From positions 187,150 through 251,149 of the IMG/VR virus record IMGVR_UViG_3300021963_000023: 64,000 nucleotides of DNA; one strand, given 5' to 3'. Position 1 is the first letter of the stretch. Every line of letters starts with the position of its first letter. Under the pieces are notes generated by a model. It was given only the letters and a program-made list of their open reading frames with translations. It searched no databases and was not told the DNA's origin. This document shows positions 43,721-62,195 of this stretch, piece by piece. Made by a program: the position numbers and the translations under genes.

Positions 43721-43771
43721 ATAGTATATATCTATATATGTATATACAAATTTTAAAATGGTGATTAGTGA

Positions 43772-43779
43772 TATTTATA
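43772..43779 (+). promoter_or_regulatory. TATTTATA putative late-promoter motif
   Basis: Upstream of the ATP-grasp-Hint gene; same motif as before the fibre genes. Confidence 0.5.
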
Positions 43780-43805
43780 TAATAAGAAATAAAAAATAAG
43801 ATTTT

Positions 43806-45299: not shown

Positions 45300-45333
45300 G
45301 ATTTTTAATAAAAATATAAAATAAAAACATATC

Positions 45334-45480: not shown

Positions 45481-45515
45481 GTTAAAAAGACGAATGTTTG
45501 TTCATCCATTTATAT

Positions 45516-46579: not shown

Positions 46580-46584
46580 TTATT

Positions 46585-46992: not shown

Positions 46993-46993
46993 A

Positions 46994-47557: not shown

Positions 47558-47633
47558 ATCCTTTTATAAAACCAATATTTTAATTACCATAATCAAAGGA
47601 CAAACTATTTATCTATGTATAATACACATTTAG

Positions 47634-50600
47634 ATGAATATATTTGATCCTCACATATCGGGCTCCCTATCAGTATCTGGTTCGGGAGAAATTTCAGGAG
47701 ACTTAAGGGTACTGGGTACCATTTCTGGCTCTATTAAGGGAGACGGGTCTCAACTCTTTAATATACCCTCTAGCGGTGTTACAGGGCTCAATTTAACACG
47801 AATTGCTGATGGGGTTGCCACAGCATCCATTTCTTCAGCAAACGGCTTAAGAATTAACTCAAATACCGAAATTACGGGGACATTAAAACTTAATAAAGTA
47901 AACTTAGGTAGTAACAACATTGTTGATATTACTCTTACAGATGGGGGAGGGAAATATTTCATCAACGGAGTTAGAGCTCCAAGGTTATCCTTCATTAAGG
48001 GATTCAAATATAGATTTTATTTTAATAACAATAACGTACACCCATTACTTTTTTCTTTAACTAGCGAAGGGGAACACAATGGAGGTACAATATATACCAC
48101 TGGAATAACAACCAACTCCGACCCTTTTTATGTTGAAGTTGATGTTACCGATGCCACAGCCACAACATTCTATTATTGGTGTGACCATCACGTTGGGATG
48201 GGTAATGCTATAACAGTATATTCGGATTTTATACATGGTCAATCTAGTATTGGTCTCATTAACGTAGATACAACTGCACTTGCCACAACCGGGTCAAATA
48301 ACTTTACAAATATTCAAAGAACAAGTGGGTCCTTAGTGGTGACCGGTTCCGTTGATATCACAGGTTCAATTACATTGAATGGTCAAGCAATTGGAACAGG
48401 AAAATTGGATGAAACAACATTTCAATCATATACAAGTTCAAACGATTCAACCAACTCAACACAAAATAGTCGGTTAACATCAATCGAGTCTGCAACGAGT
48501 AGTTTGAATTCATTTACTAGTTCCATCGATAATACAATTAAAAATAAACTTAATACGGAAGCAGTTATAACTGGAAGCGTTCAAGTTTTAATAACAGGAA
48601 CAACAGGATATTCCACGTTTAGCTCAAGTGTGTCTACAAGTATAGGTTCATTATCTAGTTCAGTTGCCACCACAACAAGTGGATTATCATCTAGCATTGG
48701 TTCTTTGAGTTCTAGTGTTGATTCTTTATCCTCATCAATTGCAACAACAACTAGTGGGTTAAGTTCTAGTGTTGCAACAACAACAAGTGGATTAAGCTCA
48801 AGTATTGGAAGTTTATCTTCGTCTTTTAGTTCCACTAATGATACTCAGAATGGTAAATTAACAAGTATTGAAACATCAACAAGTAGTTTAAATACATTTA
48901 CTAGTTCTATTGACACAACAATTAAAAATAAACTTAACACAGAAACGGTTATATCGGGAAGTGTTCAAGTTATAATAACAGGAACAACTGGTTATTCAAC
49001 ATTCAGCTCAAGTATATCAACAAGTGTAGGATTATTAAGTTCGTCAGTTGCTACAACAACAAGTGGATTAAGCTCAAGTATTGGAAGTTTATCTTCATCT
49101 TTTAGTTCTACCAGTGATGCACAGAATAATAAAATTACAAGTATTGAAACATCAACAAGTAGTTTAAATTCATATACAAGTAGTAATATTACTAACATAA
49201 ATGCAATTCATACATCAACAGGTAGTTTAAATACATTTAGTTCATCAATATTAGGTAGTATTGAACTTACTGGTTCTAATTTAACAGTTAAAGGAGATTT
49301 ACTTGTTAAAGGAACAACAACACAAATCGATTCAACAACCGTAAACATTGGCGATAATATCATTCAATTAAATGGTACTGGTGCAACCAATGCGGGTATT
49401 GTTGTTAGAGATGCAACAGCACCAAATACCATTTCAGGATCATTGTTATGGGACACAACAAATGATTATTGGAAGGCTGGAATTGTAGGAAGTGAAGAAA
49501 AAATAATTCTTAATACTGAATACTCAACGTTCTCTACATCAATAGATTCTAGAGCAACTAGTTTACAAACATCAACAAGTTCTTTAAACACATATACCAG
49601 TTCTAATAATACTAACATAAGTGCTATTCACACATCAACCGGTAGTTTAAATACATTTACATCTAGTGCTAATACTAAATTTGGTGTTATCGAAACCTCC
49701 ACATCAAGTTTAAATACATTTACTTCTTCGTTATTAACGGCAATAGAGTTAACAGGTTCTAACCTTACAGTTAGAGGTAACTTCTTGGTTAAAGGTACAA
49801 CAACAAACGTTAATACAACAACGTTAGATGTTGATAATAATCTAATTAACTTAAATGGTAATGGTGCGTCATTTGCTGGTATACGAGTTAAAGATACAAC
49901 AGGTCCAAATTTAATATCAGGGTCATTATTATGGGATGCAACAAATGATTATTGGATTGCGGGTCAATTAGGTTCAGAACAAAGATTAGTAAGAGAAACA
50001 GAATTTAACAATGCCGTTACAAGAGTAGGTAATGTTGAAACTTCAACAGGTTCATTAAACTCTTTTACGAGTTCTATTAATACAACCATTAAAACAAAAT
50101 TAAATACTGAAGGTGTTTTAAGTGGATCCATTCAAGTTAATCACAATACAACAACAAATTATGTTGCAAATGAACATATAAACCATACGGCGGTTTCAAT
50201 TACTGCAGGAAGTGGTTTAACTGGTGGCGGAGATATATCAACAACACGGACAATTAATGTGGGTGCGGGTAACGGTATAACAGTAAATGCTGATGATATT
50301 GCAATTGATACATCGTCAGCAACATTTACCACGGGTGTTAAAACTAAATTAAATACTGAAGGTGTAATATCAGGTTCTGCACAAGTTACTGGATTAAGTA
50401 ACGCACAATTAACAAACTCATCGTTTCATGTTGGAACAACATCAATATCATTAGGTAGAACAAGTGCGTCTCAAACATTAACGGGAATATCAATTGATGG
50501 CACCTCAGCTTATGCCACTCAATGGGGTACTAGTGCTGGATATGCTAATTTTAGTTCAACTGCTATATCAAGTGGTGTAGGATGGGTTTTGGGTACTACA

Positions 50601-51950
50601 GGCAATGGTTATTATGCTCCTGTTTCACTTGCTAGTGTGTCTTCTTTACTAAACTTAAGTGGTACAAACACGGGTGATGAAACATTAGCGAGAGTAAATG
50701 CATTAGCAATAACCACAGTGGGCACAATTACTTCAGGTACTTGGAACGGTACTGCAATTGGAAATGCATATTTGGCAAACTCATCTTTTCATGTTGGAAC
50801 AACATCAATATCATTAGGTAGGGCATCCGCATCACAAACATTAACGGGAGTATCGATTGATGGTAATGCCGCAACAGTAACAAACGCAACCTTCTATCGT
50901 CAGTTCACGGTAAGAGATGATAGAAGCGATGGAGGTAATTATAATTTATCAGGAAGAGCAACTGGTTTATATGCGATTGAAAGTTCAGGATCTAATGGTC
51001 CGGGTTCTGGGTATTTAAGTTTGATACACGTTGCTAATGGTACAGATGTTGCTTTCCAAATTGCGGGTGGATATACCTCTGATAATATGTATTTTAGAGG
51101 AACATCAGCATTACAAAGCGGAACTGGATATAGTGCTTGGAGAACGGTTATTCATAGTGGTAACATTGGTTCACAAACAGTATCAAACGTATCTGGAACG
51201 GTTGCAATTGCTAATGGTGGAACAGCAGCAACAGACGCAACAACAGCAAGAACAAATTTAGGTTTAGCAATTGGTACAAACGTTTTAGCATATAGAACAT
51301 TTGGAACTGCGGCAAATAGTGCAACAGGAGATTTTGCAACAGCAGCACAAGGAACAACCGCAGATGCCGCATTAGCTAGATCGGGTGGAACCATGACGGG
51401 TAATTTACTATTCTCTAACAAGGGTATTAACATGAAGAGAGATAGTGGTGCGAATACAGGTATATCTTGGTATTCTACATCATATTCAGCGTGGTGTGAT
51501 TATATGTCACCAGCAGCGACGACAGGTTGTGGCCCGAATGGTAATATTACCGCACCAGCAGGAACATATGTAACTTCGTGGGGATTAAGACGGTTTATTG
51601 AGGATAACGCGGGATTTGGTTGGACTTGGGAATCAGGAACATCAACTCAAGTAACACCAACTATTAAAGCAGAATTAAGAGCATCTGATGGTTTATTTAG
51701 TGTTGCTGGTGCAATGTATTCTGCGGGTAGTGTTGTGAAAACTGTTGCTAACTCATCATATTCAACATCATTTAGTAGTGTATCATCAGTAACAGTTACA
51801 CATAGTTTAGGAACAAAAGACGTGGCAGTATTTGTTTATGACAGTTCAGATAATATGTTCTGGCCATCATCAATCGTTACAACAAGCACATCGGTGGTTA
51901 CAATAACTTTTTCATCTTCTAGATCAGGTAGGGTTGTAGTTGTAAGATAA
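47634..51950 (+). CDS. Long tail fibre with cupredoxin-like N-proximal domain
   Basis: HPLLF...YYWCDHHVGMG; cassettes shared with 4928 and 19979; C-terminal HSLGT..V.VYD module; TATTTATC at 47606-13. Confidence 0.8.
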   Translation: MNIFDPHISGSLSVSGSGEISGDLRVLGTISGSIKGDGSQLFNIPSSGVTGLNLTRIADGVATASISSANGLRINSNTEITGTLKLNKVNLGSNNIVDITLTDGGGKYFINGVRAPRLSFIKGFKYRFYFNNNNVHPLLFSLTSEGEHNGGTIYTTGITTNSDPFYVEVDVTDATATTFYYWCDHHVGMGNAITVYSDFIHGQSSIGLINVDTTALATTGSNNFTNIQRTSGSLVVTGSVDITGSITLNGQAIGTGKLDETTFQSYTSSNDSTNSTQNSRLTSIESATSSLNSFTSSIDNTIKNKLNTEAVITGSVQVLITGTTGYSTFSSSVSTSIGSLSSSVATTTSGLSSSIGSLSSSVDSLSSSIATTTSGLSSSVATTTSGLSSSIGSLSSSFSSTNDTQNGKLTSIETSTSSLNTFTSSIDTTIKNKLNTETVISGSVQVIITGTTGYSTFSSSISTSVGLLSSSVATTTSGLSSSIGSLSSSFSSTSDAQNNKITSIETSTSSLNSYTSSNITNINAIHTSTGSLNTFSSSILGSIELTGSNLTVKGDLLVKGTTTQIDSTTVNIGDNIIQLNGTGATNAGIVVRDATAPNTISGSLLWDTTNDYWKAGIVGSEEKIILNTEYSTFSTSIDSRATSLQTSTSSLNTYTSSNNTNISAIHTSTGSLNTFTSSANTKFGVIETSTSSLNTFTSSLLTAIELTGSNLTVRGNFLVKGTTTNVNTTTLDVDNNLINLNGNGASFAGIRVKDTTGPNLISGSLLWDATNDYWIAGQLGSEQRLVRETEFNNAVTRVGNVETSTGSLNSFTSSINTTIKTKLNTEGVLSGSIQVNHNTTTNYVANEHINHTAVSITAGSGLTGGGDISTTRTINVGAGNGITVNADDIAIDTSSATFTTGVKTKLNTEGVISGSAQVTGLSNAQLTNSSFHVGTTSISLGRTSASQTLTGISIDGTSAYATQWGTSAGYANFSSTAISSGVGWVLGTTGNGYYAPVSLASVSSLLNLSGTNTGDETLARVNALAITTVGTITSGTWNGTAIGNAYLANSSFHVGTTSISLGRASASQTLTGVSIDGNAATVTNATFYRQFTVRDDRSDGGNYNLSGRATGLYAIESSGSNGPGSGYLSLIHVANGTDVAFQIAGGYTSDNMYFRGTSALQSGTGYSAWRTVIHSGNIGSQTVSNVSGTVAIANGGTAATDATTARTNLGLAIGTNVLAYRTFGTAANSATGDFATAAQGTTADAALARSGGTMTGNLLFSNKGINMKRDSGANTGISWYSTSYSAWCDYMSPAATTGCGPNGNITAPAGTYVTSWGLRRFIEDNAGFGWTWESGTSTQVTPTIKAELRASDGLFSVAGAMYSAGSVVKTVANSSYSTSFSSVSSVTVTHSLGTKDVAVFVYDSSDNMFWPSSIVTTSTSVVTITFSSSRSGRVVVVR

Positions 51951-51969: not shown

Positions 51970-53109
51970 ATGTTAAGAGAAAATGTAGAAGTTAGTGGGT
52001 CCTTAAATGTTAGTGGACAATATATTATACCAAGAGGGCCACGAGCAAATAGGCCATCTAGTCCTGATATTGGATCATTATATTTGGAAGAATCTACTAG
52101 TGGTAGTTTTGTTGTAACATACACAGCCTCATCAAATTATGACGATGGGTGGGAACCTGTCGGTTCGCAAAACACAGATAGAACTGGGTTCAAATATAGA
52201 CAGGTTATTAATTACTCATACTTAGCTGGTGGTTATAAATCCGCATCACCATGGAAGAACGTTCATAGAACAACCAATTCAACAGATCAAACGGTTCACT
52301 TAGGGGAATTATTGGATTACCCCGCATCATATACCTCCGGAGCGTGTAGTAAAAGTATTTTATTTCTTTGGTCAACAAATACCGATGGAGCATTTAAAGG
52401 AGATAATACTATTCATTCAACTTGGACCAGTGGTGTTAATATGGTAAATGAAACATCATATGCACACCAATCAAAATGGGATTTGGCAAATGCGAGAGAT
52501 GACTGTGGTACTTTACATCAAGAAACAGAATTTGCTTGGATATTTGGTGCTGGGGTTGCTGCAGTTGAGAAGTTCAATTTAACAAACGAAACAATGTATA
52601 GTGTTTATTACCAAGCGGGTGTCCCATACATTACAACAACATCATCAATCACGGGTAGTGGCCCTTCTGGTGCATCAGGATTTTCAGATGAGAATTATGG
52701 TTATGGATGGACACAACAAAGTGGTACAAAACTATTCTTCGCAAATGATACATTCACAAATAATCAGCAGTGGGGTGCGAGTGGTCAACAAAAAGGTATT
52801 AGTTCAAAGGTGGGTAAAGGTTATGCGGGAAATGAAGGAACATATAATGGGGGTTATAATTTAAGAAGATGGAATGTTTTTACTGAAACTAATTTAGGTA
52901 ATGTTTCAAAACCTCACGGTAACTGTGGTGAAGAAAACTTTACAATGGGACAAGATCATCAATATATGTTAGGTTGTTATGACGGTGCACAGGTAAATAC
53001 TAGTTGGAAATTTGGTTACACTACGGATACTGGTACAGTAAACCCTAGTGGTTTGGCGCCAGGAGTAAATGGTGGAACATCATCAGGTCATTGCGGTTGG
53101 AGAACATAA
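51970..53109 (+). CDS. Virion-associated beta-rich protein, paralogue 1 of 3
   Basis: Fibre-like N-terminus (EVSGSL, GSLYLEE), YLAGGY, NCGEEN, ends GTSSGHCGWRT. Confidence 0.6.
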   Translation: MLRENVEVSGSLNVSGQYIIPRGPRANRPSSPDIGSLYLEESTSGSFVVTYTASSNYDDGWEPVGSQNTDRTGFKYRQVINYSYLAGGYKSASPWKNVHRTTNSTDQTVHLGELLDYPASYTSGACSKSILFLWSTNTDGAFKGDNTIHSTWTSGVNMVNETSYAHQSKWDLANARDDCGTLHQETEFAWIFGAGVAAVEKFNLTNETMYSVYYQAGVPYITTTSSITGSGPSGASGFSDENYGYGWTQQSGTKLFFANDTFTNNQQWGASGQQKGISSKVGKGYAGNEGTYNGGYNLRRWNVFTETNLGNVSKPHGNCGEENFTMGQDHQYMLGCYDGAQVNTSWKFGYTTDTGTVNPSGLAPGVNGGTSSGHCGWRT

Positions 53110-53127
53110 AATTTATATTTATAAGAT

Positions 53128-54234
53128 ATGCTACACGAAAATATTGAAATTAGTGGGTCCCTAAAAGCACAAGGCGTGATAAAATCACCAATTGGAACAC
53201 GGGCAAATAGACCGAGCAGTCCACAAACTGGTTCACTTTATCTAGAACAGGCAACTAGTGGTAGTTTTTTAATGGTTTATATTGGTGTAAGTAACAACGA
53301 TAGTGGTTGGGTTAGAGTATCGTCTCAGGTAAATGCTAATGTTGGGTTTAAATTCAGACAAATTATTAACTATTCATACCTAGCCGGTGGATATAAAGAT
53401 TCATCACCATGGAAGAATGTTCATAGAACAATAAATGCAACGGATCAAACAACACATTTAGGTGAGTTGTTGGACTATCCAGCATCATACACATCTGGAG
53501 CTTGTAGTAGGTATATCTTATTTATATGGTCAGTCAATACGGATAATGTGTGGAAATCTGCATCAGATATACACGGAACAACAACCGCGGCGGTTAATAT
53601 GACCAATGAAACAAAGTACGCACATAATGTAAAGTTTAATATAACAAACATAAGGTCAGATTGTGGTACCATGCATAAAGAAACCGCCACCGCCTACATT
53701 TTTAGTGGAGGTAATGCAACCGTTGAAAAATTCGATTTGAATACAGAAACAATTGCCACCGGTTTTAATTTAACAACAATAACCGGTAACGATGGTGGTA
53801 GTGCATTCTCCGATGAAAATTTTGGATATGGATGGACAAGTAGTGAAGGTGTTAAAATGAGTTTTGCAACAGAAACATTCAGCTCAAGTGGAATGTGGGG
53901 AAACCACTCACAACAAAAAGGAATTAGTTCAAAAGTTGGTAAGGGTTACGCGGGTGCCGATGGTTCTTATAATGGTGGATATGCTTTAAGAAGATGGAGC
54001 AACGCTAACGATACTAATATTGGTAACGTTGCTAAACCACATGGCAACTGTGGAGAAGAAAATTTTACAATGGGGCAAGATCATCAATACATGTTAGGTA
54101 ATTATGATGGTGCACAAAATAATACAAGTTGGAAATTTAGTTACACAACAGACACAGGAACAGTAAACCCTAGTGGTTTAGCTCCTGGTGTTAATGGTGG
54201 AACGTCATCCGGACATTGTGGATGGAGAGGATAA
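53128..54234 (+). CDS. Virion-associated beta-rich protein, paralogue 2 of 3
   Basis: Same motifs; TATTTATA at 53116-23; ends GHCGWRG. Confidence 0.6.
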   Translation: MLHENIEISGSLKAQGVIKSPIGTRANRPSSPQTGSLYLEQATSGSFLMVYIGVSNNDSGWVRVSSQVNANVGFKFRQIINYSYLAGGYKDSSPWKNVHRTINATDQTTHLGELLDYPASYTSGACSRYILFIWSVNTDNVWKSASDIHGTTTAAVNMTNETKYAHNVKFNITNIRSDCGTMHKETATAYIFSGGNATVEKFDLNTETIATGFNLTTITGNDGGSAFSDENFGYGWTSSEGVKMSFATETFSSSGMWGNHSQQKGISSKVGKGYAGADGSYNGGYALRRWSNANDTNIGNVAKPHGNCGEENFTMGQDHQYMLGNYDGAQNNTSWKFSYTTDTGTVNPSGLAPGVNGGTSSGHCGWRG

Positions 54235-54247
54235 AACTAATTAAAAT

Positions 54248-55357
54248 ATGATATACGAGAATTTAGAAATTAGTGGAAGTTTAACATCAGATCGTGTAGT
54301 TAATAGACCACCTAAAGGCGTTAGAGCAAGTAGACCTGGTTCACCATTATCTGGTTCTTTATATTTGGAAGAATCTACTAGTGGTAGCTTTTTAATGTTA
54401 TATACCGGAGTATCAAATATTGATAACGGATGGGAAAGAATTGCAGCACAAGAAACCATCCCAATAGCATTTAAATATAGACAAGTTTTATCATATTCGT
54501 ACTTAGCCGGTGGTTATAAAGATTCATCACCGTGGAGAAACGTACATAAAACAACAAACTCAACGAATCAAACAACACACGTTGGTGAATTATTAGATTA
54601 TCCAGCGTCTTATACATCCGGTGCTTGTAATAAAACAATATTGTTTATTTGGTCAGTAAATGATGATGGGGCATGGAAAGGTCCAGATAGTATTCATGGG
54701 ACTCGGACATCAGCAATTAATTTGTTTAACGATACAAACTATGCTCATCAAGCTAAATTTAACACAGGTATTGCTAGAAGTGACGTTGCCACTATGCAAA
54801 AAGAAACGGAGTTCGCCTATCTAATTTCAGGTGGATCGACAACCATTGAAAAATTTAATCTATCTAACGAAAGTTATGTAAGTGGATTTGGTGTAACGTC
54901 AATAAATGGTAATGATGGTGGAGCCGCATTCTTTGACGAAAGTTTTGGATATGCTTGGACAAATAGTGGAGGTATCAAGTTTAATTTTTCAAATGAAACT
55001 CCCTCATCGTCAACACAATGGGGAGCACACGCTCAACAAAAAGGAATTAGTTCTAAGGTTGGAAAAGGATATGCGGGGAATGAAGGTTCATATAATGGGG
55101 GTTACAACTTAAGAAGATGGAGTAACTCTACCGATACAAATATTGGTAATGTTGCAAAGCCACATGCCAACTGTGGTGAAGAAAACTTCGCATTAGGACA
55201 AGACTGGCAATATATGTTAGGAAATTATGATGGAACAGGACAAAACAATACGTCTTGGATAATGGTTTATGCAACCGACACAGGTTCAAATGCCATTACG
55301 GGATTAGCACCACGGGTTAACGCTGGGACATCATCTGGACATTGTGGTTGGAGATAA
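54248..55357 (+). CDS. Virion-associated beta-rich protein, paralogue 3 of 3
   Basis: Same motifs; ends GHCGWR. Confidence 0.6.
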   Translation: MIYENLEISGSLTSDRVVNRPPKGVRASRPGSPLSGSLYLEESTSGSFLMLYTGVSNIDNGWERIAAQETIPIAFKYRQVLSYSYLAGGYKDSSPWRNVHKTTNSTNQTTHVGELLDYPASYTSGACNKTILFIWSVNDDGAWKGPDSIHGTRTSAINLFNDTNYAHQAKFNTGIARSDVATMQKETEFAYLISGGSTTIEKFNLSNESYVSGFGVTSINGNDGGAAFFDESFGYAWTNSGGIKFNFSNETPSSSTQWGAHAQQKGISSKVGKGYAGNEGSYNGGYNLRRWSNSTDTNIGNVAKPHANCGEENFALGQDWQYMLGNYDGTGQNNTSWIMVYATDTGSNAITGLAPRVNAGTSSGHCGWR

Positions 55358-55360
55358 CAT

Positions 55361-55389
55361 TTGACTTTATGAATATTTTTAAGTATATT
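55361..55389 (+). promoter_or_regulatory. sigma70-like promoter TTGACT-N17-TATATT
   Basis: -35 at 55361-66, -10 at 55384-89. Confidence 0.75.
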
Positions 55390-55408
55390 AGATGAAAACA
55401 AATTAATT

Positions 55409-56173
55409 ATGGAACAAGGTTACAAATATGATAGATCAAATTTTATCAATAACCCATTTGATGAAAAACTAATGCAAATTTCTGAAAGTATGTCTTTTGC
55501 ATTACCAAAATATAAAGCATATAACTTTGTGGGTGGAGCACAAATCACACCTTACGCGAGGTTAAAACAATGGTTATTAGAACTAAGAGGTAGAGAAGAT
55601 GCTGTAGAGCATTTGGAATATACCGTTAGAAAGATGGAACTTGAAATCCAAATGGATGAGGAAAGTAAAGAATTCATAACTGACCCCAAAAGAAAGGAAA
55701 TGGTTAATATAACCATTGCTGATAAAATGATTGATTTAAGAAAGTTTAATAGAAATCTTAAAGATGCATATAGAGAAAGACAAGGGTTTATTGATTTGAT
55801 AAAAGAATTCTTGGAATCTGATCAGGCGATTTTACCTAACGGAACGAAATTAATTGATGTATTTGGAAATCCCGAATTAGAAGAAAAATATGAACATGAA
55901 TACTGGACCGTTCGTATGGCAAAGCAAGCTATGCTAGATATGATTTCATATGGTAGAATTGGTACTGGTAATTTAGATTCGATTCTTATGATGGACCCAG
56001 AACAACAAAAACAAGTGCTAGCATTAGCATCCGCATATACTATCTCAACCGATAAAAATATAAACCAATTAATGACAGAAGCAACAACAAACAATTTTAC
56101 AATTGAAGAGTCATTAAAAAATCAGTTAAGATTAAGTGAACCAAATAAAACAGAAACAGAAAAATTATTATAA
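55409..56173 (+). CDS. Hypothetical helical/coiled-coil protein
   Basis: 254 aa, E/K-rich; ends EKLL. Confidence 0.6.
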   Translation: MEQGYKYDRSNFINNPFDEKLMQISESMSFALPKYKAYNFVGGAQITPYARLKQWLLELRGREDAVEHLEYTVRKMELEIQMDEESKEFITDPKRKEMVNITIADKMIDLRKFNRNLKDAYRERQGFIDLIKEFLESDQAILPNGTKLIDVFGNPELEEKYEHEYWTVRMAKQAMLDMISYGRIGTGNLDSILMMDPEQQKQVLALASAYTISTDKNINQLMTEATTNNFTIEESLKNQLRLSEPNKTETEKLL

Positions 56174-56913
56174 TGACACATATTCTTTTTAAAGTACAGG
56201 GAGACGTTCCAGGTTACATACAAGTAGTTGGGATGTATTTAAATTACAATTATGGTAGAATTGCTGACGAGTACAACGATATGAGAGTTGAGTTGAATAA
56301 ACTTGGGGCAATAGTTATACCAGAAATTGTGGCTAAAGGCTTTGTTTTTGCTGACATATATAAAGATTATATTAGCGTTAGAACAAACTCGCATATTATG
56401 GACGAAATTCCTCAGTTAGCCGAATCTAGTGAGTCTGAAGAAGAAAAAGTAAAATATTTTCTTAATGAGGATGACAAACTATCAGCTGTACTTTTTAATA
56501 AAGCTGCAATGAGAAAAGTTGTTGCTGATAGATTTTCAGAAAGATATAAAGAGTTAATGGTTGATGCTTCTATACTAGAAAAAGATACTTGGGAAGAACA
56601 GAAAAGAGAAGCGTTTGGTTGGACAGCTGACGAAGATTATCAAACTCCGATCATAGATATTTTATGTGCGGGTAGAAATATAGATAAAACATTATTTGTA
56701 CAAAAGATAATTAACAATGTTACAGCATATAATGTTAAATTAGCAAATCTATTATTAGAACAACAACTATTAGAAGAAAGAATTAAGGCGTGTGTAAACA
56801 TCGCAGATTGCCACAGACTTAAGCACGAAAAATTTGGTGTTGCATTGAGCAAACAACAAAGGGAAGATGAAAATATTCCAACAACACCTCTCACATTGAA
56901 AATGGATTTTTAA
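56173..56913 (+). CDS. Hypothetical protein, resembles tail-fibre assembly-type helical domain
   Basis: E..TW..Q..EA..W...TP....L...R pattern. Confidence 0.45.
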   Translation: MTHILFKVQGDVPGYIQVVGMYLNYNYGRIADEYNDMRVELNKLGAIVIPEIVAKGFVFADIYKDYISVRTNSHIMDEIPQLAESSESEEEKVKYFLNEDDKLSAVLFNKAAMRKVVADRFSERYKELMVDASILEKDTWEEQKREAFGWTADEDYQTPIIDILCAGRNIDKTLFVQKIINNVTAYNVKLANLLLEQQLLEERIKACVNIADCHRLKHEKFGVALSKQQREDENIPTTPLTLKMDF

Positions 56914-57914
56914 TGAATTTAGCTATTAACGGGACGTGTGCCAAAGGATGCTCATTTTGTTTCACAAAAGAAGACGCAAGACTAAAACACACACTCGGAG
57001 AAATGGATATAAACATGGTCGATAAAGTTATCGACCATTTTCATCTAAACAACTCCAACGAAGAAATCACAATACTCGGAGGTGAACCAACACAACATTC
57101 TAATTTTATTGGGATAATGGATCACATTTTCTCTAGAGGTTATAAGGTAAATCTAGTTAGTAATTTTCTTTTTGGTAAAACAACCAGAGATTATATTATA
57201 GATAATATTAAAAACATTAGATGGGCCTTTCCTAATGCCGCGGAACTCAATGAGAAAAACCGAATGGTTGTTTTTAAAAAGAACTATTTAGAAATCTATA
57301 AGGCTTATGCTAACACATGGGGATTCGATAACCACCCAAGATTATATTTGGCACTAACAATGTCAAGTGATTGGAAAGATAGAAATTTTTATGAATATAT
57401 CAAATGGTTATACCACGAGTTAGATGGTAATATAAACGCCATAAGACTAGGTTTAGACCTTACTGGAACATATCTTATCAACAATAAAGAGATGGGCGTT
57501 GAGATGACCAAAATACTTAAATTTGGACGTTATAATGAGATTAAAATAACATCAGATTGTCAAGTTCCGCCATGTCTTTGGGAGGGTAAAACAAAAGGGG
57601 CTGTGATGGAAAATTCATTAAACTTTGCTACGTTTAAAATACCTGAATATGAAACAATATGTGGGTTTATGCCATTGGATATATTCCCAGATGGTAGTTC
57701 TATTCATTGTTATCCATTAGAAGATAAAGTAAAGATCAATAATGTTTTGGAAATATCGGGAGAAAATGGTATATTAGGTCTTAGAGAAGAGTTCGATAAA
57801 CTTTATATAGAAAACCATAAAAATTATTCAATACCACAAGGATGTTTAGATTGTGTTTTTTACAAGACAGAATGTAATGGAATTTGTGGTGGTTGTTTAG
57901 AGGGAACCAAATGA
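56913..57914 (+). CDS. Radical SAM protein with C-terminal SPASM-like Cys cluster
   Basis: CAKGCSFC, LGGEP, C-terminal CLDC..C..ICGGC. Confidence 0.85.
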   Translation: MNLAINGTCAKGCSFCFTKEDARLKHTLGEMDINMVDKVIDHFHLNNSNEEITILGGEPTQHSNFIGIMDHIFSRGYKVNLVSNFLFGKTTRDYIIDNIKNIRWAFPNAAELNEKNRMVVFKKNYLEIYKAYANTWGFDNHPRLYLALTMSSDWKDRNFYEYIKWLYHELDGNINAIRLGLDLTGTYLINNKEMGVEMTKILKFGRYNEIKITSDCQVPPCLWEGKTKGAVMENSLNFATFKIPEYETICGFMPLDIFPDGSSIHCYPLEDKVKINNVLEISGENGILGLREEFDKLYIENHKNYSIPQGCLDCVFYKTECNGICGGCLEGTK

Positions 57915-58951
57915 CAAATAAAATATTTTCAATACCGTTTAATCCGATGCTATCGGAAGAAGTATTCTTGAAAGAGTTCTACCCATTCCTGGAAAGGAAC
58001 AAGGAATCAATCTATGACATTTATTTTACCTGTAGAATACCACCTTTCACACAAGATGCGATGGGTGCTATCTTTAGAGAAGAGGATAGAGACATTGTGT
58101 TTGAAAACGCAATGATTATACAAAAGGCTTTAGGTATTAGAATTAGTGCAACGTTCAATAATATTAATGTTTCTCCAAAATATGAGAACTATAAATTGTT
58201 TGTTGATAATTTAAAACCATTATATGAAAAGGGATTAAGGTGTATAACTATTCCTCATGGTCATTGGGTTGCAATGGGATTGAAGAAACATTTTCCAGAG
58301 ATGGAAATTAAAAATACCATATTAAGAAAAGTTGCAACCGGTCAGGACTTTTGGTACAATGCTGATCAGGGATTTGATTATATTAATCTCGATAGAATTT
58401 TAATGAGAGATATTGAGGAGCTTAAAAACATTAAGCGTGCCCAATTAAGATATTACGAAGAGAAGGGTAGGTATGTTAAACTATCACTCTTGGTTAACGA
58501 GGGTTGTTTAGGTAGATGCCCAGTAATGGATGAACACTATTCATATAATAACCTTAGGCAACCTAATGAACTACCATATTTTCATCATGAGATATCTAAA
58601 GTAACATGTGAATACAAATGGGAAAAAGAGATCAATGCATTCTTTTTTAAAGCCGCAACAATACCACCATTCAAAGAAGAGTTTGACGAATTGCTAGAAT
58701 ATATCGATGTCTTTAAAATGCATGGTAGAGATAGCTTTAATCGTTTAAATGAAACAATAGAGATTGTGGATTCATATGTTGCAGGTAATGAAATTTTATC
58801 TGAAACATCAAATCTTTATCTTGATGGTATACCACACGAAGAATTAAAAGGTTGGAGAAATAAAATAAAGAAATGTAAATTTCAATGTTGGGATTGTAAC
58901 TATTGTGATGTAGTTGCTGACCACAAAAAGAAATCATATGGACTTAGTTAA
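57911..58951 (+). CDS. Peptidase U32-family (Fe-S hydroxylase-like) protein
   Basis: LLVNEGCLGRC, FKMHGR, C-terminal CKFQCWDCNYC. ATG 57911 overlaps the upstream stop. Confidence 0.7.
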   Translation: MTNKIFSIPFNPMLSEEVFLKEFYPFLERNKESIYDIYFTCRIPPFTQDAMGAIFREEDRDIVFENAMIIQKALGIRISATFNNINVSPKYENYKLFVDNLKPLYEKGLRCITIPHGHWVAMGLKKHFPEMEIKNTILRKVATGQDFWYNADQGFDYINLDRILMRDIEELKNIKRAQLRYYEEKGRYVKLSLLVNEGCLGRCPVMDEHYSYNNLRQPNELPYFHHEISKVTCEYKWEKEINAFFFKAATIPPFKEEFDELLEYIDVFKMHGRDSFNRLNETIEIVDSYVAGNEILSETSNLYLDGIPHEELKGWRNKIKKCKFQCWDCNYCDVVADHKKKSYGLS

Positions 58952-59603
58952 ACATATTGACGATTCAATTGAATGGGGTAAACTAGAGGTATCTAAATTA
59001 ACACAAGACATTTTAGATATTCATGGGATTACAAGTAATAAAGTGAGATCATTTCTTAATAACATATGTAGTCTGGATAACGCAACTTATCTTGAGGTTG
59101 GTGTGTTCAGGGGTGCCACATTTTGTTCTGCGATATATGGTAATGATATTAAATCAATTGCAATTGATAATTTTATGTCACCTAATTTAACACCAAAAGG
59201 TGTTAGTCAGAAGTTAGGTAACTATTACAAACATAATATTGATATTTTACCACAAGAAGAATTTTTGCATAATGTAAAACGATTTGGTAATGTGAATAAC
59301 ATATCAGTATATAAAACTGATTACCAAACATTTGATTTTAAAACGCTACCACATGTTGACATTATTTTTTATGATGGTGAAACAAAATATCATGATCAAT
59401 ATGTTGCATTAACAAACATGTTACCAATTTTTTCTAAAGAAACCATAGTCATTATGGATGATTGGAATTGGAACAGTGGTGCTTTCGATAAATTCATTGA
59501 AGATAATAATTTAATGATAACATATTACAAGGAGTTAATCACATCTGGTGAAGACTCAAAGGATTTTTGGAATGGTCTTGGGGTATTTTTAATTGAGAGA
59601 TAG
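58938..59603 (+). CDS. Class I SAM methyltransferase
   Basis: YLEVGVFRGAT, AIDNF, FYDG, IMDDWNW. Confidence 0.75.
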   Translation: MDLVKHIDDSIEWGKLEVSKLTQDILDIHGITSNKVRSFLNNICSLDNATYLEVGVFRGATFCSAIYGNDIKSIAIDNFMSPNLTPKGVSQKLGNYYKHNIDILPQEEFLHNVKRFGNVNNISVYKTDYQTFDFKTLPHVDIIFYDGETKYHDQYVALTNMLPIFSKETIVIMDDWNWNSGAFDKFIEDNNLMITYYKELITSGEDSKDFWNGLGVFLIER

Positions 59604-59649: not shown

Positions 59650-59739
59650 GGGGAGGTGGGTGAGTGGTTTAAACCGACAGCCTCCGAAGCTGCTATTGGA
59701 CTTAACATTCAATCGAGAGTCCGAATCTCTTCCTCCCCG
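59650..59739 (+). tRNA. tRNA with CCG anticodon (nominally Arg) on a type II, Ser-like body
   Basis: Acceptor GGGGAGG/CCTCCCC, discriminator G; D arm GGT-GAGTGGTTTAA-ACC; anticodon arm CAGC-CTCCGAA-GCTG; variable stem ATTGGA/TTCAAT; T arm GAGAG-TCCGAAT-CTCTT; CCA not encoded. Confidence 0.85.
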
Positions 59740-59772
59740 CAATTTTATAAACTTTTCTTAAACAAAAACAAA

Positions 59773-60657
59773 ATGAGAAAAACAATCACAATGCTATCGC
59801 TAATGTTAGCATTTTTGTTTATTACTAGATTGTCATATGGTCAGTATAGTAGTAGTGCAATTCAGAAAGGTTCAGAACAATCCTTAAAAGTTCAAACGGA
59901 CACAGTCCCTAATCAATTACAAGAAATTGTTGTTACAGCAAAGAAGGTACCTTTAATGACCAAGGTAGGCCCTTATGGTCAACCACTTTGGACAACAATG
60001 AGAATGTTTGCATCCACTAGAGTTTATGTGATGAACCCACCAGGTACCGCAATGTACGAGAAGTGGTTTGACATTAGACAAAGAAGAAACGGACCGGCAC
60101 AAATTAGAATGAGAGATGAATTCACATTCGGTTTAGGTAAGAGGCTTCAGTTGGATTTATATTCCCACACGGTTTATGACGGTAAAGATGGGGATAAACA
60201 ATTCAAATGGAGAGGTTTTTCTTGGGAGTTTCGTTATGCTCTTGCTGATTGGGGTAAATTATGGGGTAATCCAACTCTATATTGGGAAACAAAAATGTTA
60301 AATGGTCGCTGGGGTATTGAACCAAAGTTATTACTCGGTGATAGAATCGGTAAAAGTGGTATCTGGGGTTTCAATGCTATCTACGAAGGTAATCTAGCAG
60401 ATAAAAAAGAACTCCGTGAAGATGAATATGCGTATACCGCATCATATGCAAACATAATCAATAATGATTTGACATTAGGGGTTTCTCACATGTTTAGGTA
60501 TAACGACTTCGATGGTGGATCACAAGAATGGTACCTTGGGCCACTTTTACAATATCGTTTTAATAACAAAGGTTATTTGAATATTGAGCATATGCCAGGT
60601 TTAAACCAAGACGCAAAACAATCAAGAACCACAATTATATTCGCATGGAGATTCTAA
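59773..60657 (+). CDS. Outer-membrane beta-barrel protein with signal peptide and TonB-box-like motif
   Basis: MRKTITMLSLMLAFLF signal peptide, LQEIVVTA, alternating aromatic strands, terminal AWRF. The track start at 59656 lies inside the tRNA and is rejected. Confidence 0.7.
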   Translation: MRKTITMLSLMLAFLFITRLSYGQYSSSAIQKGSEQSLKVQTDTVPNQLQEIVVTAKKVPLMTKVGPYGQPLWTTMRMFASTRVYVMNPPGTAMYEKWFDIRQRRNGPAQIRMRDEFTFGLGKRLQLDLYSHTVYDGKDGDKQFKWRGFSWEFRYALADWGKLWGNPTLYWETKMLNGRWGIEPKLLLGDRIGKSGIWGFNAIYEGNLADKKELREDEYAYTASYANIINNDLTLGVSHMFRYNDFDGGSQEWYLGPLLQYRFNNKGYLNIEHMPGLNQDAKQSRTTIIFAWRF

Positions 60658-61652
60658 TCAACGGACAAGTATTCCTTGTCTATTTAATATTCATTATGTT
60701 CGTAACAGGTATCCTCAAAGAAAGAGGATACCTTATGGACATCTTTAGATTACTGGAACAAAGAGTTAAGTCAAAGAGAACGGTGGTATTCTTAGTATCA
60801 CTATTTGGTGGGATCTTACCAATCCCTGGACGAGTTGCATTATCAGCATCTATGTTAAACAGCATAGCACCAGTTGATAATAAGAAACGTAAGAAGTTTG
60901 GTATCATTGACTACCTAGCAACACATCACTATTATCTATGGTCACCTTTAGAGAAAACTGTTATTATTCCAATGGCTGTGTTAAGTTTAACCTATATGCA
61001 ATTCATGTCATATATCTGGCCATTACTTTTAATCTCAGCGTTATATATTACTTATTATATCTTATCATTAAAAGATGATGAAATAGATATTGAAGTTAAA
61101 GATGAACCAATTAATATGCAAAACATAACGATGGTGGTTATACCATTTTTAGTAACCATATTAATGTGTGTGTTTTTTACTGAATACTATTTTGGTTTCT
61201 TCACAGGATTCACAATATGGTTAGTATATTACTCTAAAAGCTGGAGTAAAATATTGAGCTATATCGACTGGGAACTAATATGGATCGTTGCTTTGGTTAT
61301 TATTTTAGGTAACCTTGTTGGATCTTACTATACACAGATAGAAGCTATAATAAAACAGTACAGTGAACCATCTAACATATTGATTGTCTCTGTGTTAGGT
61401 TTTTTAGCTTCATTTTTATTAGGTTCTTCAGCAAAATATGCTGGAATTGTTAGTTTATTAACTAGTGTATTTGGAATGCATTATTTTGTTCTATTCTTTA
61501 CTTTAGAATATTCAGCATACCTAATTTCACCATCACATAAGTGTTTACCTATTGGCCAAAGGTATTTTCATACTGGGTTTCTAACATATCTAAAAGCATT
61601 AATAATTTGGATATCAATGATGATAACTTATGCAATATTTACAGTTCTGTAA
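60645..61652 (+). CDS. Multi-pass inner-membrane transporter (DUF401/ion-transporter-like)
   Basis: About 9-10 hydrophobic segments, GILPIPG, SPSHKCL. Confidence 0.65.
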   Translation: MEILINGQVFLVYLIFIMFVTGILKERGYLMDIFRLLEQRVKSKRTVVFLVSLFGGILPIPGRVALSASMLNSIAPVDNKKRKKFGIIDYLATHHYYLWSPLEKTVIIPMAVLSLTYMQFMSYIWPLLLISALYITYYILSLKDDEIDIEVKDEPINMQNITMVVIPFLVTILMCVFFTEYYFGFFTGFTIWLVYYSKSWSKILSYIDWELIWIVALVIILGNLVGSYYTQIEAIIKQYSEPSNILIVSVLGFLASFLLGSSAKYAGIVSLLTSVFGMHYFVLFFTLEYSAYLISPSHKCLPIGQRYFHTGFLTYLKALIIWISMMITYAIFTVL

Positions 61653-62184: not shown

Positions 62185-62195
62185 GCTCCTTTTTT
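62163..62195. terminator. Bidirectional intrinsic terminator between convergent genes
   Basis: A-tract, AAGGAGCT-AATTA-AGCTCCTT, T-tract; both stop codons fall in or next to the loop. Confidence 0.8.

What the first reader, a model, noticed from the sequence alone, without database searches (positions are those of the whole stretch)
51970..59603. Second module: three GHCGWR-ending paralogues next to a radical SAM + U32 + methyltransferase operon
Seen in sequence: three ~370-aa paralogues with fibre-type N-termini and invariant Cys motifs (SGAC, NCGEEN, terminal GTSSGHCGWR). They are followed by a separately promoted operon of two helical proteins, a radical SAM-SPASM enzyme, a U32-family protein with an extra Cys4 tail and a methyltransferase. 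Established: U32 proteins (RlhA, TrhP, UbiU/V) are Fe-S, O2-independent hydroxylases. Inference: a dedicated maturation pathway for a virion appendage (modification or cofactor insertion at the conserved Cys/His/Trp), possibly an anaerobic counterpart of the 2OG oxygenase cluster. The adjacent odd tRNA is an alternative substrate.
Basis: partly seen in the sequence, partly recalled or inferred. Interest (0 to 1): 0.62.

Follow-up and report, generated by a model that had tools for sequence, protein, structure and literature searches.

The report
Phage propeller fibre-tip cassette with Fe-S enzymes
Three copies of a propeller-shaped, probably fibre-tip, protein sit next to two unknown proteins and a set of iron-sulfur and methylating enzymes, and this same gene cassette recurs in very different phages, so the enzymes probably mature the propeller by a chemistry not yet described for any virus particle.

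Summary
Three paralogues (379, 368 and 369 aa; 60-66% identical), all ending GTSSGHCGWR, are followed by two unknown proteins (H1, H2), a radical SAM enzyme, a TIM-barrel protein and a Methyltransf_24 methyltransferase.

New here:
- Residues about 78-368 of the paralogues form a six-bladed Kelch-type beta-propeller. The terminal motif is its last strand.
- The "U32" protein gets no Pfam hit. Its model's best solved match is the U32 peptidase Mk0906, and it has a U32-like Cys motif, so it is a distant U32-superfamily member.
- Propeller, H1, H2 and the U32-like/methyltransferase gene travel together: in 69 of 70 informative IMG/VR loci, in 123 cyanomyovirus genomes, in Ralstonia jumbo phage RP12, and behind 1493- and 2368-aa fibre proteins.
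- The radical SAM gene is an accessory, and the tRNA is specific to the closest relatives.
- The U32-like enzyme occurs alone in anaerobic and microaerophilic bacteria and in one virus. The propeller was never found without it.

Best reading: the propeller is the client of an Fe-S hydroxylase/O-methyltransferase pair (confidence 0.4). No modification has been shown.

The parts
47634..51950 (+). 1438-aa fibre-like protein directly upstream (context; shares repeats with other giant ORFs of the window)
   Evidence: (internal repeats shared with other large ORFs). In L005 the equivalent upstream gene is a 3698-aa protein with a Peptidase_S74 domain.
51970..53109 (+). T1: propeller paralogue 1 (379 aa); N-terminal ~75-aa beta domain plus a six-bladed Kelch-type propeller
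   Evidence: phrog_1417 E 3e-43; 65% and 60% identical to T2 and T3; orthologues form a supported clade in the tree (99).
53128..54234 (+). T2: propeller paralogue 2 (368 aa); this is the copy that was modelled
   Evidence: AF2 pLDDT 87.7. Residues 77-368 match the KLHL17 Kelch domain with Z 29.3, rmsd 2.5 A over 270 residues; Foldseek E 1e-13 to Keap1. Last strand is 360-367.
54248..55357 (+). T3: propeller paralogue 3 (369 aa)
   Evidence: phrog_1417 E 5e-41; 66% identical to T2.
55409..56173 (+). H1: cassette-specific protein (254 aa, phrog_1409) with invariant Q54, E58, E123, W166, R169, K172, Q173, G182, G187, N188
   Evidence: Present in 69 of 70 informative loci. Absent from a virus and three bacterial genomes that carry the U32-like gene alone.
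56173..56913 (+). H2: second cassette-specific protein (246 aa, phrog_1604); its order relative to H1 is swapped in cyanophages
   Evidence: Weak leads only: PHROG 'tail protein' E 0.0016; Atlas feature hit to HI1402_helical at 0.91.
56913..57914 (+). Radical SAM enzyme with a SPASM-like C-terminal half (333 aa); an accessory part of the cassette
   Evidence: PF04055 33 bits. Invariant C9, C13, C16 plus C216, C221, C250, C266, C311, C314, C321, C325. Present in 61 of 70 loci, but absent from deposited phages.
57911..58951 (+). U32-superfamily TIM-barrel protein (346 aa from the ATG) with invariant C208, C212, C242 and a C-terminal Cys4 tail (C331, C335, C338, C341; numbering of the 355-aa ORF from 57884)
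   Evidence: AF2 pLDDT 86.6. Best solved match is U32 peptidase Mk0906: Z 15.5, rmsd 3.2 A over 221 residues, against 13.1 for the next chain. Motif comparison; Atlas neighbours named or partly annotated as Peptidase U32.
58938..59603 (+). SAM-dependent methyltransferase (Methyltransf_24); fused to the U32-like protein in most distant relatives
   Evidence: PF13578 E 1.3e-7; phrog_1458 covers both genes; fusions of 540-570 aa, some named 'predicted O-methyltransferase YrrM' by JGI.
59650..59740 (+). tRNA with anticodon CCG and a long variable arm; adjacent to the cassette but not a conserved part of it
   Evidence: Present in 19 of 80 related loci only.
59773..60657 (+). Exported, outer-membrane-like protein (294 aa from the ATG; signal-peptide-like N-terminus); clade-specific companion
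   Evidence: No Pfam or PHROG hit. Present in 32 of 44 loci with enough downstream DNA.
60645..61652 (+). DUF401 / TIGR00529 integral membrane protein (permease-like), a frequent member of the cassette
   Evidence: PF04165 40.4 bits against a cut-off of 24; phrog_14035 E 9e-82. Directly after the U32-like gene in RP12 (37% identical). Present in 42 of 44 loci; also in L005, L090 and L106.
61705..62184 (+). 159-aa protein (phrog_1401) that follows DUF401 throughout the window's clade

Best explanation
This is a mobile phage cassette built around a propeller domain.

Shown:
- The core is a Kelch-type six-bladed beta-propeller. In this phage it is present as three short, recently duplicated paralogues. 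In other phages it is the C-terminal domain of fibre-like proteins up to 2368 aa long.
- Two cassette-specific proteins (H1, H2) and a distant U32-superfamily TIM-barrel protein, fused or translationally coupled to a SAM methyltransferase, always follow it.
- This lineage adds a radical SAM enzyme with a SPASM-like Cys set, a DUF401 permease and an exported protein.

Inferred:
- The propeller is a virion fibre-tip (host-recognition) domain.
- Late in infection, in the cytoplasm, H1 and H2 hold or present the new propeller to the U32-like enzyme.
- That enzyme, by analogy with RlhA, TrhP and UbiU/UbiV, hydroxylates an sp2 carbon without O2. The target would be an invariant residue or a bound ligand among the conserved polar positions (Y89, Y121, K264, K269, E310, N312, Q330, N332, S360, S361).
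- The methyltransferase then caps the new hydroxyl. The radical SAM enzyme adds a further, lineage-specific step.

The conserved C-terminal motif is structural: it is the last strand of the propeller. It is not the modification site.
For: - Fold of the propeller. The domain always sits at the C-terminus, in proteins of 300-2368 aa. In some relatives the protein carrying it, or its neighbour, has He_PIG, CBM_5_12, TIG, Peptidase_S74 or collagen-repeat domains.
- Kelch-like propellers are annotated as virion structural proteins in other jumbo phages.
- Synteny: 69 of 70 IMG/VR loci with enough upstream DNA have T, H1 and H2 in front of the U32-like gene.
- Among deposited phages, 126 records hold the U32-like gene and 123 hold T. 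The cyanophage counts by organism name are identical for the two (77/38/8). The other three are RP12-like, and RP12 ORF142 is a divergent T (hhalign E 4.8e-5 end to end; Foldseek E 3.8e-12).
- Very divergent T proteins, picked without regard to their neighbours, are again followed by H2, H1 and the U32-like/MT gene.
- Asymmetry: the U32-like gene occurs without T or H1 in bacteria and in one virus. T was never seen without it. This fits a client that depends on a more general enzyme.
- U32 relationship. Sullivan et al. 2005 described P-SSM4 orf35 as having homology only to 'an archaeal protease' (PMC1079782).
- Enzyme pairing also seen in cells: Campylobacterales homologues sit beside radical SAM-SPASM genes, a class that mostly acts on peptides and proteins (established knowledge).
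- Stop/start overlaps run from H1 through the methyltransferase.
- The window holds a large block of further candidate protein- or glycan-modifying enzymes next to fibre genes.
Against: - There is no direct evidence of any modification, and no evidence that T is in a virion.
- PhiRP31 virion mass spectrometry found the collagen-repeat gene product next to T, but not T, H1 or the enzymes, among 32 proteins from gel bands (PMC5468394 Table S3).
- The three cyanophages with virion proteomes lack the cassette, so they give no information.
- Known U32 enzymes act on RNA or quinones, not proteins.
- A permease (DUF401) fits a small-molecule pathway better than a protein modification.
- The polar positions are conserved across phages of cyanobacteria and Ralstonia and uncultured relatives, which is unusual for a receptor-binding site.
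- The complex prediction of T with H1 and H2 gave no answer.
- Most of the sampled loci are close relatives, so the count of 69 of 70 overstates the number of independent observations. Independent lineages number about six to eight.
Confidence: 0.4

Rival explanations
1. Small-molecule pathway. The U32-like hydroxylase, the methyltransferase and the variable tailoring enzymes (radical SAM, flavin halogenase-like, 2OG oxygenase) build or alter a small aromatic or sugar-like compound. DUF401 carries the precursor or product across the membrane. The propeller holds the compound non-covalently among its conserved polar positions as a ligand or cofactor, or merely sits next to the pathway.
For: - DUF401 permease in most lineages.
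- Interchangeable tailoring enzymes next to the U32-like/MT gene: Trp_halogenase and 2OG-FeII_Oxy_5 in L088 and L090; radical SAM here.
- Polar residues in blades 5-6 and the closing strand are conserved regardless of host.
- Established: hydroxylation followed by O-methylation of an aromatic ring is the logic of ubiquinone synthesis (UbiU/V plus UbiG), and six-bladed propellers can hold cofactors such as PQQ.
Against: - SPASM-type radical SAM enzymes mostly act on peptides or proteins.
- No precursor-supplying enzymes are conserved in the cassette.
- P-SSM4 has no DUF401 within 9 kb of the cassette, and RP12 has no methyltransferase within 9 kb.
- H1 and H2 remain unexplained.
Confidence: 0.2
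2. Nucleic-acid modification. The U32-like/methyltransferase pair makes 5-hydroxy- and then 5-methoxy-pyrimidine in tRNA, rRNA or phage DNA, like TrhP plus TrmR (the yrrMNO genes) in Bacillus subtilis. Its place next to the propeller gene reflects only shared inheritance.
For: - Same enzyme pairing as TrhP/TrmR (established knowledge). JGI names the fused methyltransferase domain 'predicted O-methyltransferase YrrM'.
- The genome has 23 tRNAs and a tmRNA.
- In the one virus with a stand-alone U32-like gene, it lies among replication and nucleotide-metabolism genes, next to a dCTP-deaminase-like gene. RP12 has a dCTP deaminase 4 kb away.
Against: - Strict adjacency to T, H1 and H2 across unrelated phage groups, including when T is the end of a 2368-aa fibre protein.
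- The neighbouring tRNA is kept in only 19 of 80 loci.
- The family is not recognised by the U32 model that finds the true U32 proteins in the same bacterial genomes.
Confidence: 0.12
3. No functional link. H1 and H2 are ordinary fibre assembly chaperones for the propeller. The enzymes and the permease are unrelated auxiliary metabolic genes that hitch-hike in a hyperplastic fibre region.
For: - Genes right after receptor-binding genes are often chaperones (established knowledge).
- H2 has weak leads to a tail protein PHROG and to a helical prophage family.
- H1 is absent wherever T is absent.
Against: - Hitch-hiking should break down over the distances sampled (T4-like cyanophages, the phiKZ-like RP12, uncultured jumbo phages), yet the order T, H, H, U32-like is kept while everything around it changes.
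- Gene overlaps suggest co-translation.
Confidence: 0.13
4. The U32-like protein is a real peptidase, as the family was first named (collagenase-like). It trims collagen-like or fibre precursors during assembly.
For: - The historical U32 annotation (established knowledge).
- A collagen-repeat virion protein is encoded next to the cassette in RP12/RP31.
- Fibre genes with self-cleaving S74 domains lie upstream in L003 and L005.
Against: - Every U32 member whose function has been worked out is an Fe-S hydroxylase (established knowledge).
- Seven invariant Cys and a fused SAM methyltransferase point to redox and methyl chemistry, not proteolysis.
Confidence: 0.05

Closest known systems
U32 family O2-independent hydroxylases (RlhA, TrhP, UbiU/UbiV; Pfam PF01136; structure 5d88 Mk0906)
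   Same: - TIM-barrel fold whose best solved match is Mk0906 (Z 15.5).
- A strand ending V-x-x-G-C followed by G-R-C, at the place of the U32 Fe-S Cys pair.
- Some structural neighbours in the ESM Atlas carry PF01136.
- Bacterial homologues are all from anaerobes or microaerophiles.
   Different: - Not found by PF01136; profile-profile match is only E 9e-4, probability 23%.
- The Cys pair is spaced C-x3-C instead of C-x6-C.
- Only three invariant Cys in the barrel, plus an extra C-x3-C-x2-C-x2-C tail.
- Fused to a methyltransferase.
- Always next to a propeller gene in phages. No activity is known.
Bacillus subtilis yrrM-yrrN-yrrO (TrmR with TrhP1/TrhP2: ho5U then mo5U in tRNA)
   Same: A U32-type enzyme paired with a YrrM-like SAM O-methyltransferase, which suggests hydroxylate-then-methylate logic. 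Tandem U32-like paralogues occur in some bacterial loci.
   Different: This resemblance comes from my own knowledge and from a JGI name. It was not tested. The methyltransferase here is Methyltransf_24. The conserved neighbours are a propeller and two unknown proteins, not RNA genes.
Kelch-type six-bladed beta-propellers (Keap1, KLHL family; galactose oxidase-type and lectin propellers; Kelch-like virion proteins of jumbo phages)
   Same: Fold (Z 25-29, rmsd about 2.5 A). The last strand completes the propeller. GG-Y-type blade motifs. Phage Kelch-like proteins are annotated as structural.
   Different: No Pfam Kelch hit. Conserved residues are concentrated asymmetrically in blades 5-6 and the closing strand. 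The protein ends 1-2 residues after the last strand. Obligatory enzyme neighbours.
Radical SAM-SPASM protein and peptide maturases (anSME/AslB, PqqE, QhpD, AlbA)
   Same: CX3CX2C plus eight more invariant Cys in a SPASM-like pattern. One homologue is named AslB-like by JGI. A protein client is encoded nearby.
   Different: The Pfam SPASM model does not hit. No short precursor peptide is evident. The gene is dispensable for the cassette in cyanophages and RP12.
Virus-encoded modification of virion proteins (mycobacteriophage capsid and tail glycosylation; mimivirus collagen hydroxylase/glycosyltransferase)
   Same: Modifying enzymes encoded beside fibre genes. The window also holds glycosyltransferases and 2OG oxygenases.
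   Different: Those systems use O2-dependent oxygenases or glycosyltransferases. An Fe-S U32-type enzyme with a methyltransferase has not been reported for a virion protein in the searched literature.

Membership tests
Peptidase_U32 (PF01136) / U32 hydroxylases | Match to the family HMM above its cut-off | tested here: not met
   No hit in the protein at E <= 0.1. None in the whole genome at E <= 10. One of 29 homologues hits at E 0.22. In five bacterial genomes the model finds the true U32 genes but not the homologues of this protein.
Peptidase_U32 (PF01136) / U32 hydroxylases | TIM-barrel fold closest to a solved U32 protein | tested here: met
   5d88 is the top hit among 48,161 representative chains: Z 15.5, rmsd 3.2 A over 221 residues; the next is 13.1. 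Foldseek E 8e-7. Atlas neighbours at TM 0.90 are named Peptidase U32, or 20% of their members carry PF01136.
Peptidase_U32 (PF01136) / U32 hydroxylases | Conserved Cys set that binds the 4Fe-4S cluster (C-x6-C-x15-C-x3-C in typical members) | tested here: inconclusive
   C208-x3-C212 sits at the equivalent strand end with the same G-R-C, and C242 is followed by an aromatic/W as in U32. Only three Cys are invariant in the barrel; four more form a separate tail.
Peptidase_U32 (PF01136) / U32 hydroxylases | Prephenate-dependent, O2-independent hydroxylase activity | not testable with these tools
   Needs anaerobic biochemistry.
Radical SAM superfamily (PF04055) | CX3CX2C motif and an HMM match above the cut-off | tested here: met
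   33 bits against 29.5. C9, C13 and C16 are invariant in 20 homologues.
SPASM subgroup of radical SAM (PF13186) | C-terminal domain with 7-8 Cys for two auxiliary clusters | tested here: inconclusive
   No PF13186 hit. Eight extra invariant Cys are present, including C250-x15-C266 and C311-x2-C314-x6-C321-x3-C325.
Kelch-type beta-propeller | Six four-stranded blades closed by a terminal strand | tested here: met
   Model pLDDT 87.7. Z 29.3, 28.7 and 28.4 to the KLHL17, KLHL12 and Keap1 Kelch domains over 266-270 residues.
Kelch-type beta-propeller | Match to a Pfam Kelch repeat model | tested here: not met
   No Pfam family at E <= 0.1 for any of the three paralogues.
Methyltransf_24 (PF13578) class I SAM methyltransferases | HMM match above the cut-off | tested here: met
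   32.9 bits against 26.3, covering the full profile. The same domain is annotated in the fused homologues.
DUF401 / TIGR00529 membrane proteins | HMM match above the cut-off | tested here: met
   PF04165 40.4 bits against 24. The TIGR00529 score of 51 bits is far below its equivalog cut-off of 378, so family level only.
Virion tail-fibre / receptor-binding protein | Detected in purified virions | not testable with these tools
   Published proteomes are uninformative. S-PM2, Syn9 and S-SM1 lack the gene. PhiRP31 gel-band MS lists 32 proteins without it.
Virion tail-fibre / receptor-binding protein | C-terminal domain of long fibre-like proteins, next to fibre genes | tested here: met
   The domain is C-terminal in proteins of up to 2368 aa. 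Neighbours include S74, collagen-repeat and PTL_trimer genes.

The most novel reading that the evidence does not exclude
The U32 superfamily has a branch whose substrate is a protein. A phage-encoded Fe-S hydroxylase/O-methyltransferase, helped by two dedicated adaptor proteins, installs an O2-independent hydroxyl and then methoxy modification, or a derived cofactor, in a Kelch-type fibre-tip propeller. This modification would be needed for host recognition in many marine cyanophages, phiKZ-like jumbo phages and uncultured jumbo phages.
Probability: 0.3. Interest if true: 0.85.

Novelty: new variant of a known kind. Interest (0 to 1): 0.66.

Why it matters
The cassette is common. At least 587 IMG/VR contigs hold it, as do 123 sequenced cyanomyoviruses, including the well-studied P-SSM4 and P-HM2. 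All of its genes are still 'hypothetical'. In 2005 two of them were set aside as probably transient, non-functional pick-ups.

If the enzymes do mature the propeller, three things follow:
- It would be the first Fe-S, O2-independent modification of a virus particle.
- It would be the first protein, or protein-bound, substrate for the U32 superfamily.
- It would add a new factor to host recognition by ocean phages.

Culturable carriers exist (cyanophages, and Ralstonia phages RP12 and RP31), so the question can be tested directly. The bacterial stand-alone homologues next to radical SAM-SPASM genes point to an uncharacterised cellular pathway of the same kind.

Tried and rejected
- Megablast of the whole region against deposited phages: no match.
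- tblastn of the radical SAM protein against phages: no match.
- Complex prediction of H1 + H2 + T2: 'no answer', score 0.00. This counts neither for nor against binding.
- Profile or sequence searches of PDB sequences with the U32-like profile, the methyltransferase, the radical SAM protein, and the H1 and H2 profiles: nothing significant.
- Atlas feature search for H1: only its own viral cluster.
I looked up individual divergent members instead.
- hhalign of the U32-like alignment against seven ORFs cut from the bacterial U32 loci (two of them, L115 and L118, look like wrong-frame ORFs without the U32 Cys set): weak, E 9e-4, probability 23%.
- The idea that the three Cys form a conserved disulfide or metal site: rejected. 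The positions vary independently, and 19 of 70 members have none.
- The idea that the triplication is ancient and points to a fixed heterotrimer: not supported. Paralogues group by phage lineage in a quick tree.
- The idea that the viral Trp-halogenase genes are regular members: rejected. In deposited phages they occur mostly in cyanophages that were not among the carriers of the cassette listed.
- The N-termini as shared 'fibre-type' adaptors: no similarity to other proteins of the genome.

Full report
**Where the window lies.** The window is the last 64 kb of a single 251,149-bp viral contig (IMG/VR record, linear, estimated 75% complete). GC content is about 32%. Nothing in the deposited-phage collection is close at the DNA level.

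**The observation.** Three tandem genes (T1 51970-53109, T2 53128-54234, T3 54248-55357) encode proteins of 379, 368 and 369 aa. They are 60-66% identical, and each ends in GTSSGHCGWR plus at most one further residue. Five tightly packed genes follow:
- H1 (55409-56173) and H2 (56173-56913).
- A radical SAM enzyme (56913-57914; PF04055 above its cut-off; CX3CX2C at residues 9-16).
- A 346-aa protein that most likely starts at ATG 57911, an ATGA overlap with the previous stop.
- A Methyltransf_24 methyltransferase (most likely 58938-59603).

The T3-H1 gap holds a sigma-70-like site, but such sites are no more frequent in this region than in shuffled sequence.

**What the three paralogues are.** No Pfam or NCBIfam model hits them. 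They belong to phrog_1417, which has no assigned function.
- A profile search of 1.8 billion representative proteins found 221 clusters. The roughly 300-residue core is always at the C-terminus, in proteins from about 300 to 2368 aa.
- An AlphaFold2 model of T2, built on a 70-sequence alignment, has pLDDT 87.7.
- Residues about 78-368 form a six-bladed Kelch-type beta-propeller: Z 29.3, rmsd 2.5 A over 270 residues to KLHL17, and Foldseek E 1e-13 to Keap1.
- The terminal motif is the last beta-strand (360-367), which completes the propeller (an inference from the Kelch fold). That explains why the protein stops right after it.

Across the family the invariant or near-invariant residues are G88, Y89, W95, G112, Y121, G124, K264, K269, G309, E310, N312, G316, Q317, Y321, G324, Q330, N332, G358, S360 and S361.

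Cys126 occurs in 28 of 70 members, Cys308 in 20, Cys364 in 38 and His363 in 22. Nineteen members have none of these Cys, and the positions vary independently.

Among predicted viral structures, the nearest are the cyanophage 'sericin 1-like' protein, an RP12 protein, and Kelch-like proteins of jumbo phages, some annotated as structural.

A quick tree groups the paralogues by phage lineage. Duplication to two or three copies has therefore happened repeatedly, or the copies are being homogenised. Copy number in related loci is 3 (36 loci), 2 (4 loci) or 1 (5 loci).

**What the 'U32' protein is.** Pfam PF01136 does not detect it, nor anything else in the genome. In bacteria that carry homologues, the model finds the true U32 genes but not these. 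Several lines still point to a distant U32 relationship:
- The model (pLDDT 86.6) is a TIM barrel. Its best solved match, in a Foldseek-based search and in an exhaustive search of 48,161 chains, is the U32 peptidase Mk0906: Z 15.5, rmsd 3.2 A over 221 residues. The next TIM barrels score 13.1.
- Profile-profile alignment to a small U32 alignment is weak but in register (E 9e-4).
- The invariant C208-x3-C212 sits on the strand end where U32 proteins have their first Fe-S Cys pair, and shares the G-R-C. C242 resembles the last U32 Cys.
- ESM Atlas structural neighbours at TM 0.90 are named 'Peptidase U32', or 20% of their members carry PF01136.
- In 2005 the P-SSM4 homologue was described as having homology only to an 'archaeal protease' (PMC1079782).

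I therefore treat it as a distant U32-superfamily member. It has three invariant barrel Cys and an extra invariant C-x3-C-x2-C-x2-C tail. In most distant relatives it is fused to the methyltransferase. These fusions are 540-570 aa, and JGI names some of them 'predicted O-methyltransferase YrrM'.

**The radical SAM enzyme.** Besides C9, C13 and C16, eight more Cys are invariant in a SPASM-like spacing. The Pfam SPASM model does not hit.

- Deposited phages. The U32-like protein occurs in 126 records: 123 cyanomyoviruses and 3 Ralstonia RP12-like phages. The propeller occurs in 123, with the same breakdown by organism name.
- P-SSM4. The order is T (orf32), H2, H1, U32-like/MT fusion (orf35).
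- RP12, a phiKZ-like phage. The order is collagen-repeat protein, ORF142, ORF141, H1, U32-like, DUF401. ORF142 is a divergent propeller of the same family (hhalign E 4.8e-5 end to end; Foldseek E 3.8e-12).
- IMG/VR. Of 80 loci fetched through the U32-like protein, 70 have at least 4.5 kb upstream. Of these, 69 carry T, H1 and H2, and 61 carry the radical SAM gene. Of the 44 loci with enough downstream DNA, 43 carry the methyltransferase, 42 DUF401 and 32 the exported protein.
- Loci reached through the radical SAM protein. A 57-kb contig has three roughly 690-aa He_PIG proteins ending in the propeller. A 110-kb Tara contig has an S74 fibre followed by three propeller genes. Both continue with H1, H2, radical SAM and U32-like/MT.
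- Loci reached through very divergent propellers of 2368 and 1493 aa. Both continue with H2, H1 and U32-like/MT. Their further neighbours are Trp_halogenase, 2OG oxygenases and DUF401.

The core is therefore T, H1, H2 and U32-like, with the methyltransferase usually attached. The radical SAM gene, DUF401, the halogenase, the oxygenases and the exported protein are accessories.

The tRNA is present in only 19 of the 80 loci, all in the window's own clade.

**The enzyme without the propeller.**
- One 224-kb viral record has the U32-like gene alone, among replication and nucleotide-metabolism genes. It has no T and no H1 anywhere in the record.
- Among 21 loci in bacterial and archaeal genomes and MAGs, those from Smithella/Syntrophaceae, Campylobacterales (including a complete Halarcobacter chromosome), Cloacimonadota, Desulfocapsa, Bacillota and Victivallales carry stand-alone homologues, 38-51% identical, without T, H1, H2 or the methyltransferase.
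- In Campylobacterales these homologues occur as paralogue pairs flanked by radical SAM-SPASM genes.

The dependence is thus one-sided. The propeller, H1 and H2 always come with the enzyme, but the enzyme family exists without them.

**Interpretation.** The recurrent, order-preserving association across unrelated phage groups argues for a functional unit. The one-sided dependence suggests the propeller, with H1 and H2, is a specialised client of a more general Fe-S enzyme.

By analogy with characterised U32 enzymes (established knowledge: RlhA, TrhP and UbiU/V hydroxylate sp2 carbons without O2) and with the fused O-methyltransferase-like domain, I propose hydroxylation followed by methylation. 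The target would be an invariant residue, or a ligand held among the conserved polar positions of the propeller. The SPASM-like radical SAM enzyme would add a lineage-specific step.

This step is inference. No tool here can show a modification. The complex prediction was uninformative.

Published virion proteomes do not settle whether T is in the particle:
- The three cyanophages with virion proteomes lack the cassette.
- PhiRP31 gel-band mass spectrometry detected the flanking collagen-repeat protein and another neighbour, but not T, H1 or the enzymes.

The rivals are a small-molecule pathway with DUF401 as transporter, a TrhP/TrmR-like nucleic-acid modification, plain hitch-hiking, and a true protease. 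They are scored in their own sections.

**Context.** The same window carries two GT7-like glycosyltransferases with lectin-like domains, a GT2, six radical SAM paralogues, several 2OG-Fe(II) oxygenases and a SET-domain protein, all upstream of the 1438-aa fibre gene. This phage therefore invests heavily in candidate modifying enzymes beside its fibre genes. Both O2-dependent and O2-sensitive enzyme types are present, so the module is not simply an 'anaerobic replacement'.

**Novelty.** Full-text searches found no paper that links these genes or describes a U32-type or radical SAM modification of a phage fibre. The genes are catalogued only as hypothetical: T4-GC 351-354, and phrogs 1417, 1409, 1604 and 1458.

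I rate it a new variant of a known kind, namely virus-encoded maturation of virion proteins. There is a real chance that it is something categorically new.

Noticed in passing
window 59650-59740 (+): 91-nt tRNA with anticodon CCG (Arg codon CGG), a long variable arm like Ser/Leu/Tyr tRNAs, and G after the acceptor stem. CGG is the rarest sense codon of the genome (19 of 76,629 codons). Six of the 19 lie in the fibre, T2 and T3 genes just upstream. Which amino acid the tRNA carries is unknown. It is kept at this spot in 19 of 80 related loci.
   Followed up: partly
window 28010-47557 (+): A large block of candidate modifying enzymes: two GT7-like glycosyltransferases with Laminin_G_3 domains, a GT2, six radical SAM paralogues (four of them with a SPASM hit at the N-terminus), at least five 2OG-Fe(II) oxygenases and a SET-domain protein.
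   Followed up: partly
G000 contig 39720-50489 (outside the window): A tmRNA gene and a cluster of 21 tRNA genes.
   Followed up: no
window 59773-60657 (+); locus L091: The exported protein has a signal-peptide-like N-terminus that looks Bacteroidota-like to me (untested). The nearest hit of the window's clade among cellular genome bins is a Bacteroidota MAG contig that carries T, T, H1, H2 and the radical SAM gene (67% identity in the U32-like gene). Both hint at a Bacteroidota host.
   Followed up: no
L088 14402-15895; L090 9603-11123: Flavin-dependent Trp-halogenase-like genes directly follow the U32-like/MT gene in two divergent cassettes. The characterised viral halogenase VirX1 has no known natural substrate (PMC8407142). 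In deposited phages the halogenase mostly occurs in cyanophages that were not among the listed carriers of the cassette.
   Followed up: partly
L098 8-3013; L105 7985-12153: In Campylobacterales bins, U32-like paralogues are interleaved with or flanked by radical SAM-SPASM genes (anSME-like Cys patterns). L105 also has a Cys-rich 292-aa protein. This looks like an uncharacterised cellular pathway.
   Followed up: partly
L072 9980-11095 (224-kb viral record G001): A stand-alone U32-like gene sits between an SPFH protein and a dCTP-deaminase-like gene, near a GGDEF-EAL protein, an intein-containing DnaB helicase, a ligase and a PD-(D/E)XK nuclease. The record has no propeller and no H1.
   Followed up: yes
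L054 46-3321: In one related contig the propeller genes are broken into about eleven short ORFs while the enzyme genes are intact. This is either assembly error or decay of the propeller genes.
   Followed up: no
window 62181-63026 (-): An NAD-dependent nucleotide-sugar epimerase/dehydratase (phrog_540, LegB/RmlB-like) lies on the opposite strand right after the module, behind a bidirectional terminator-like hairpin at 62167-62195.
   Followed up: no
L093 8744-13804, L095: In Syntrophaceae bins the stand-alone U32-like gene is followed by a conserved 258-aa unknown protein, a GNAT, a TauE exporter and sulfate-activation genes (CysD-like, CysN/C).
   Followed up: no
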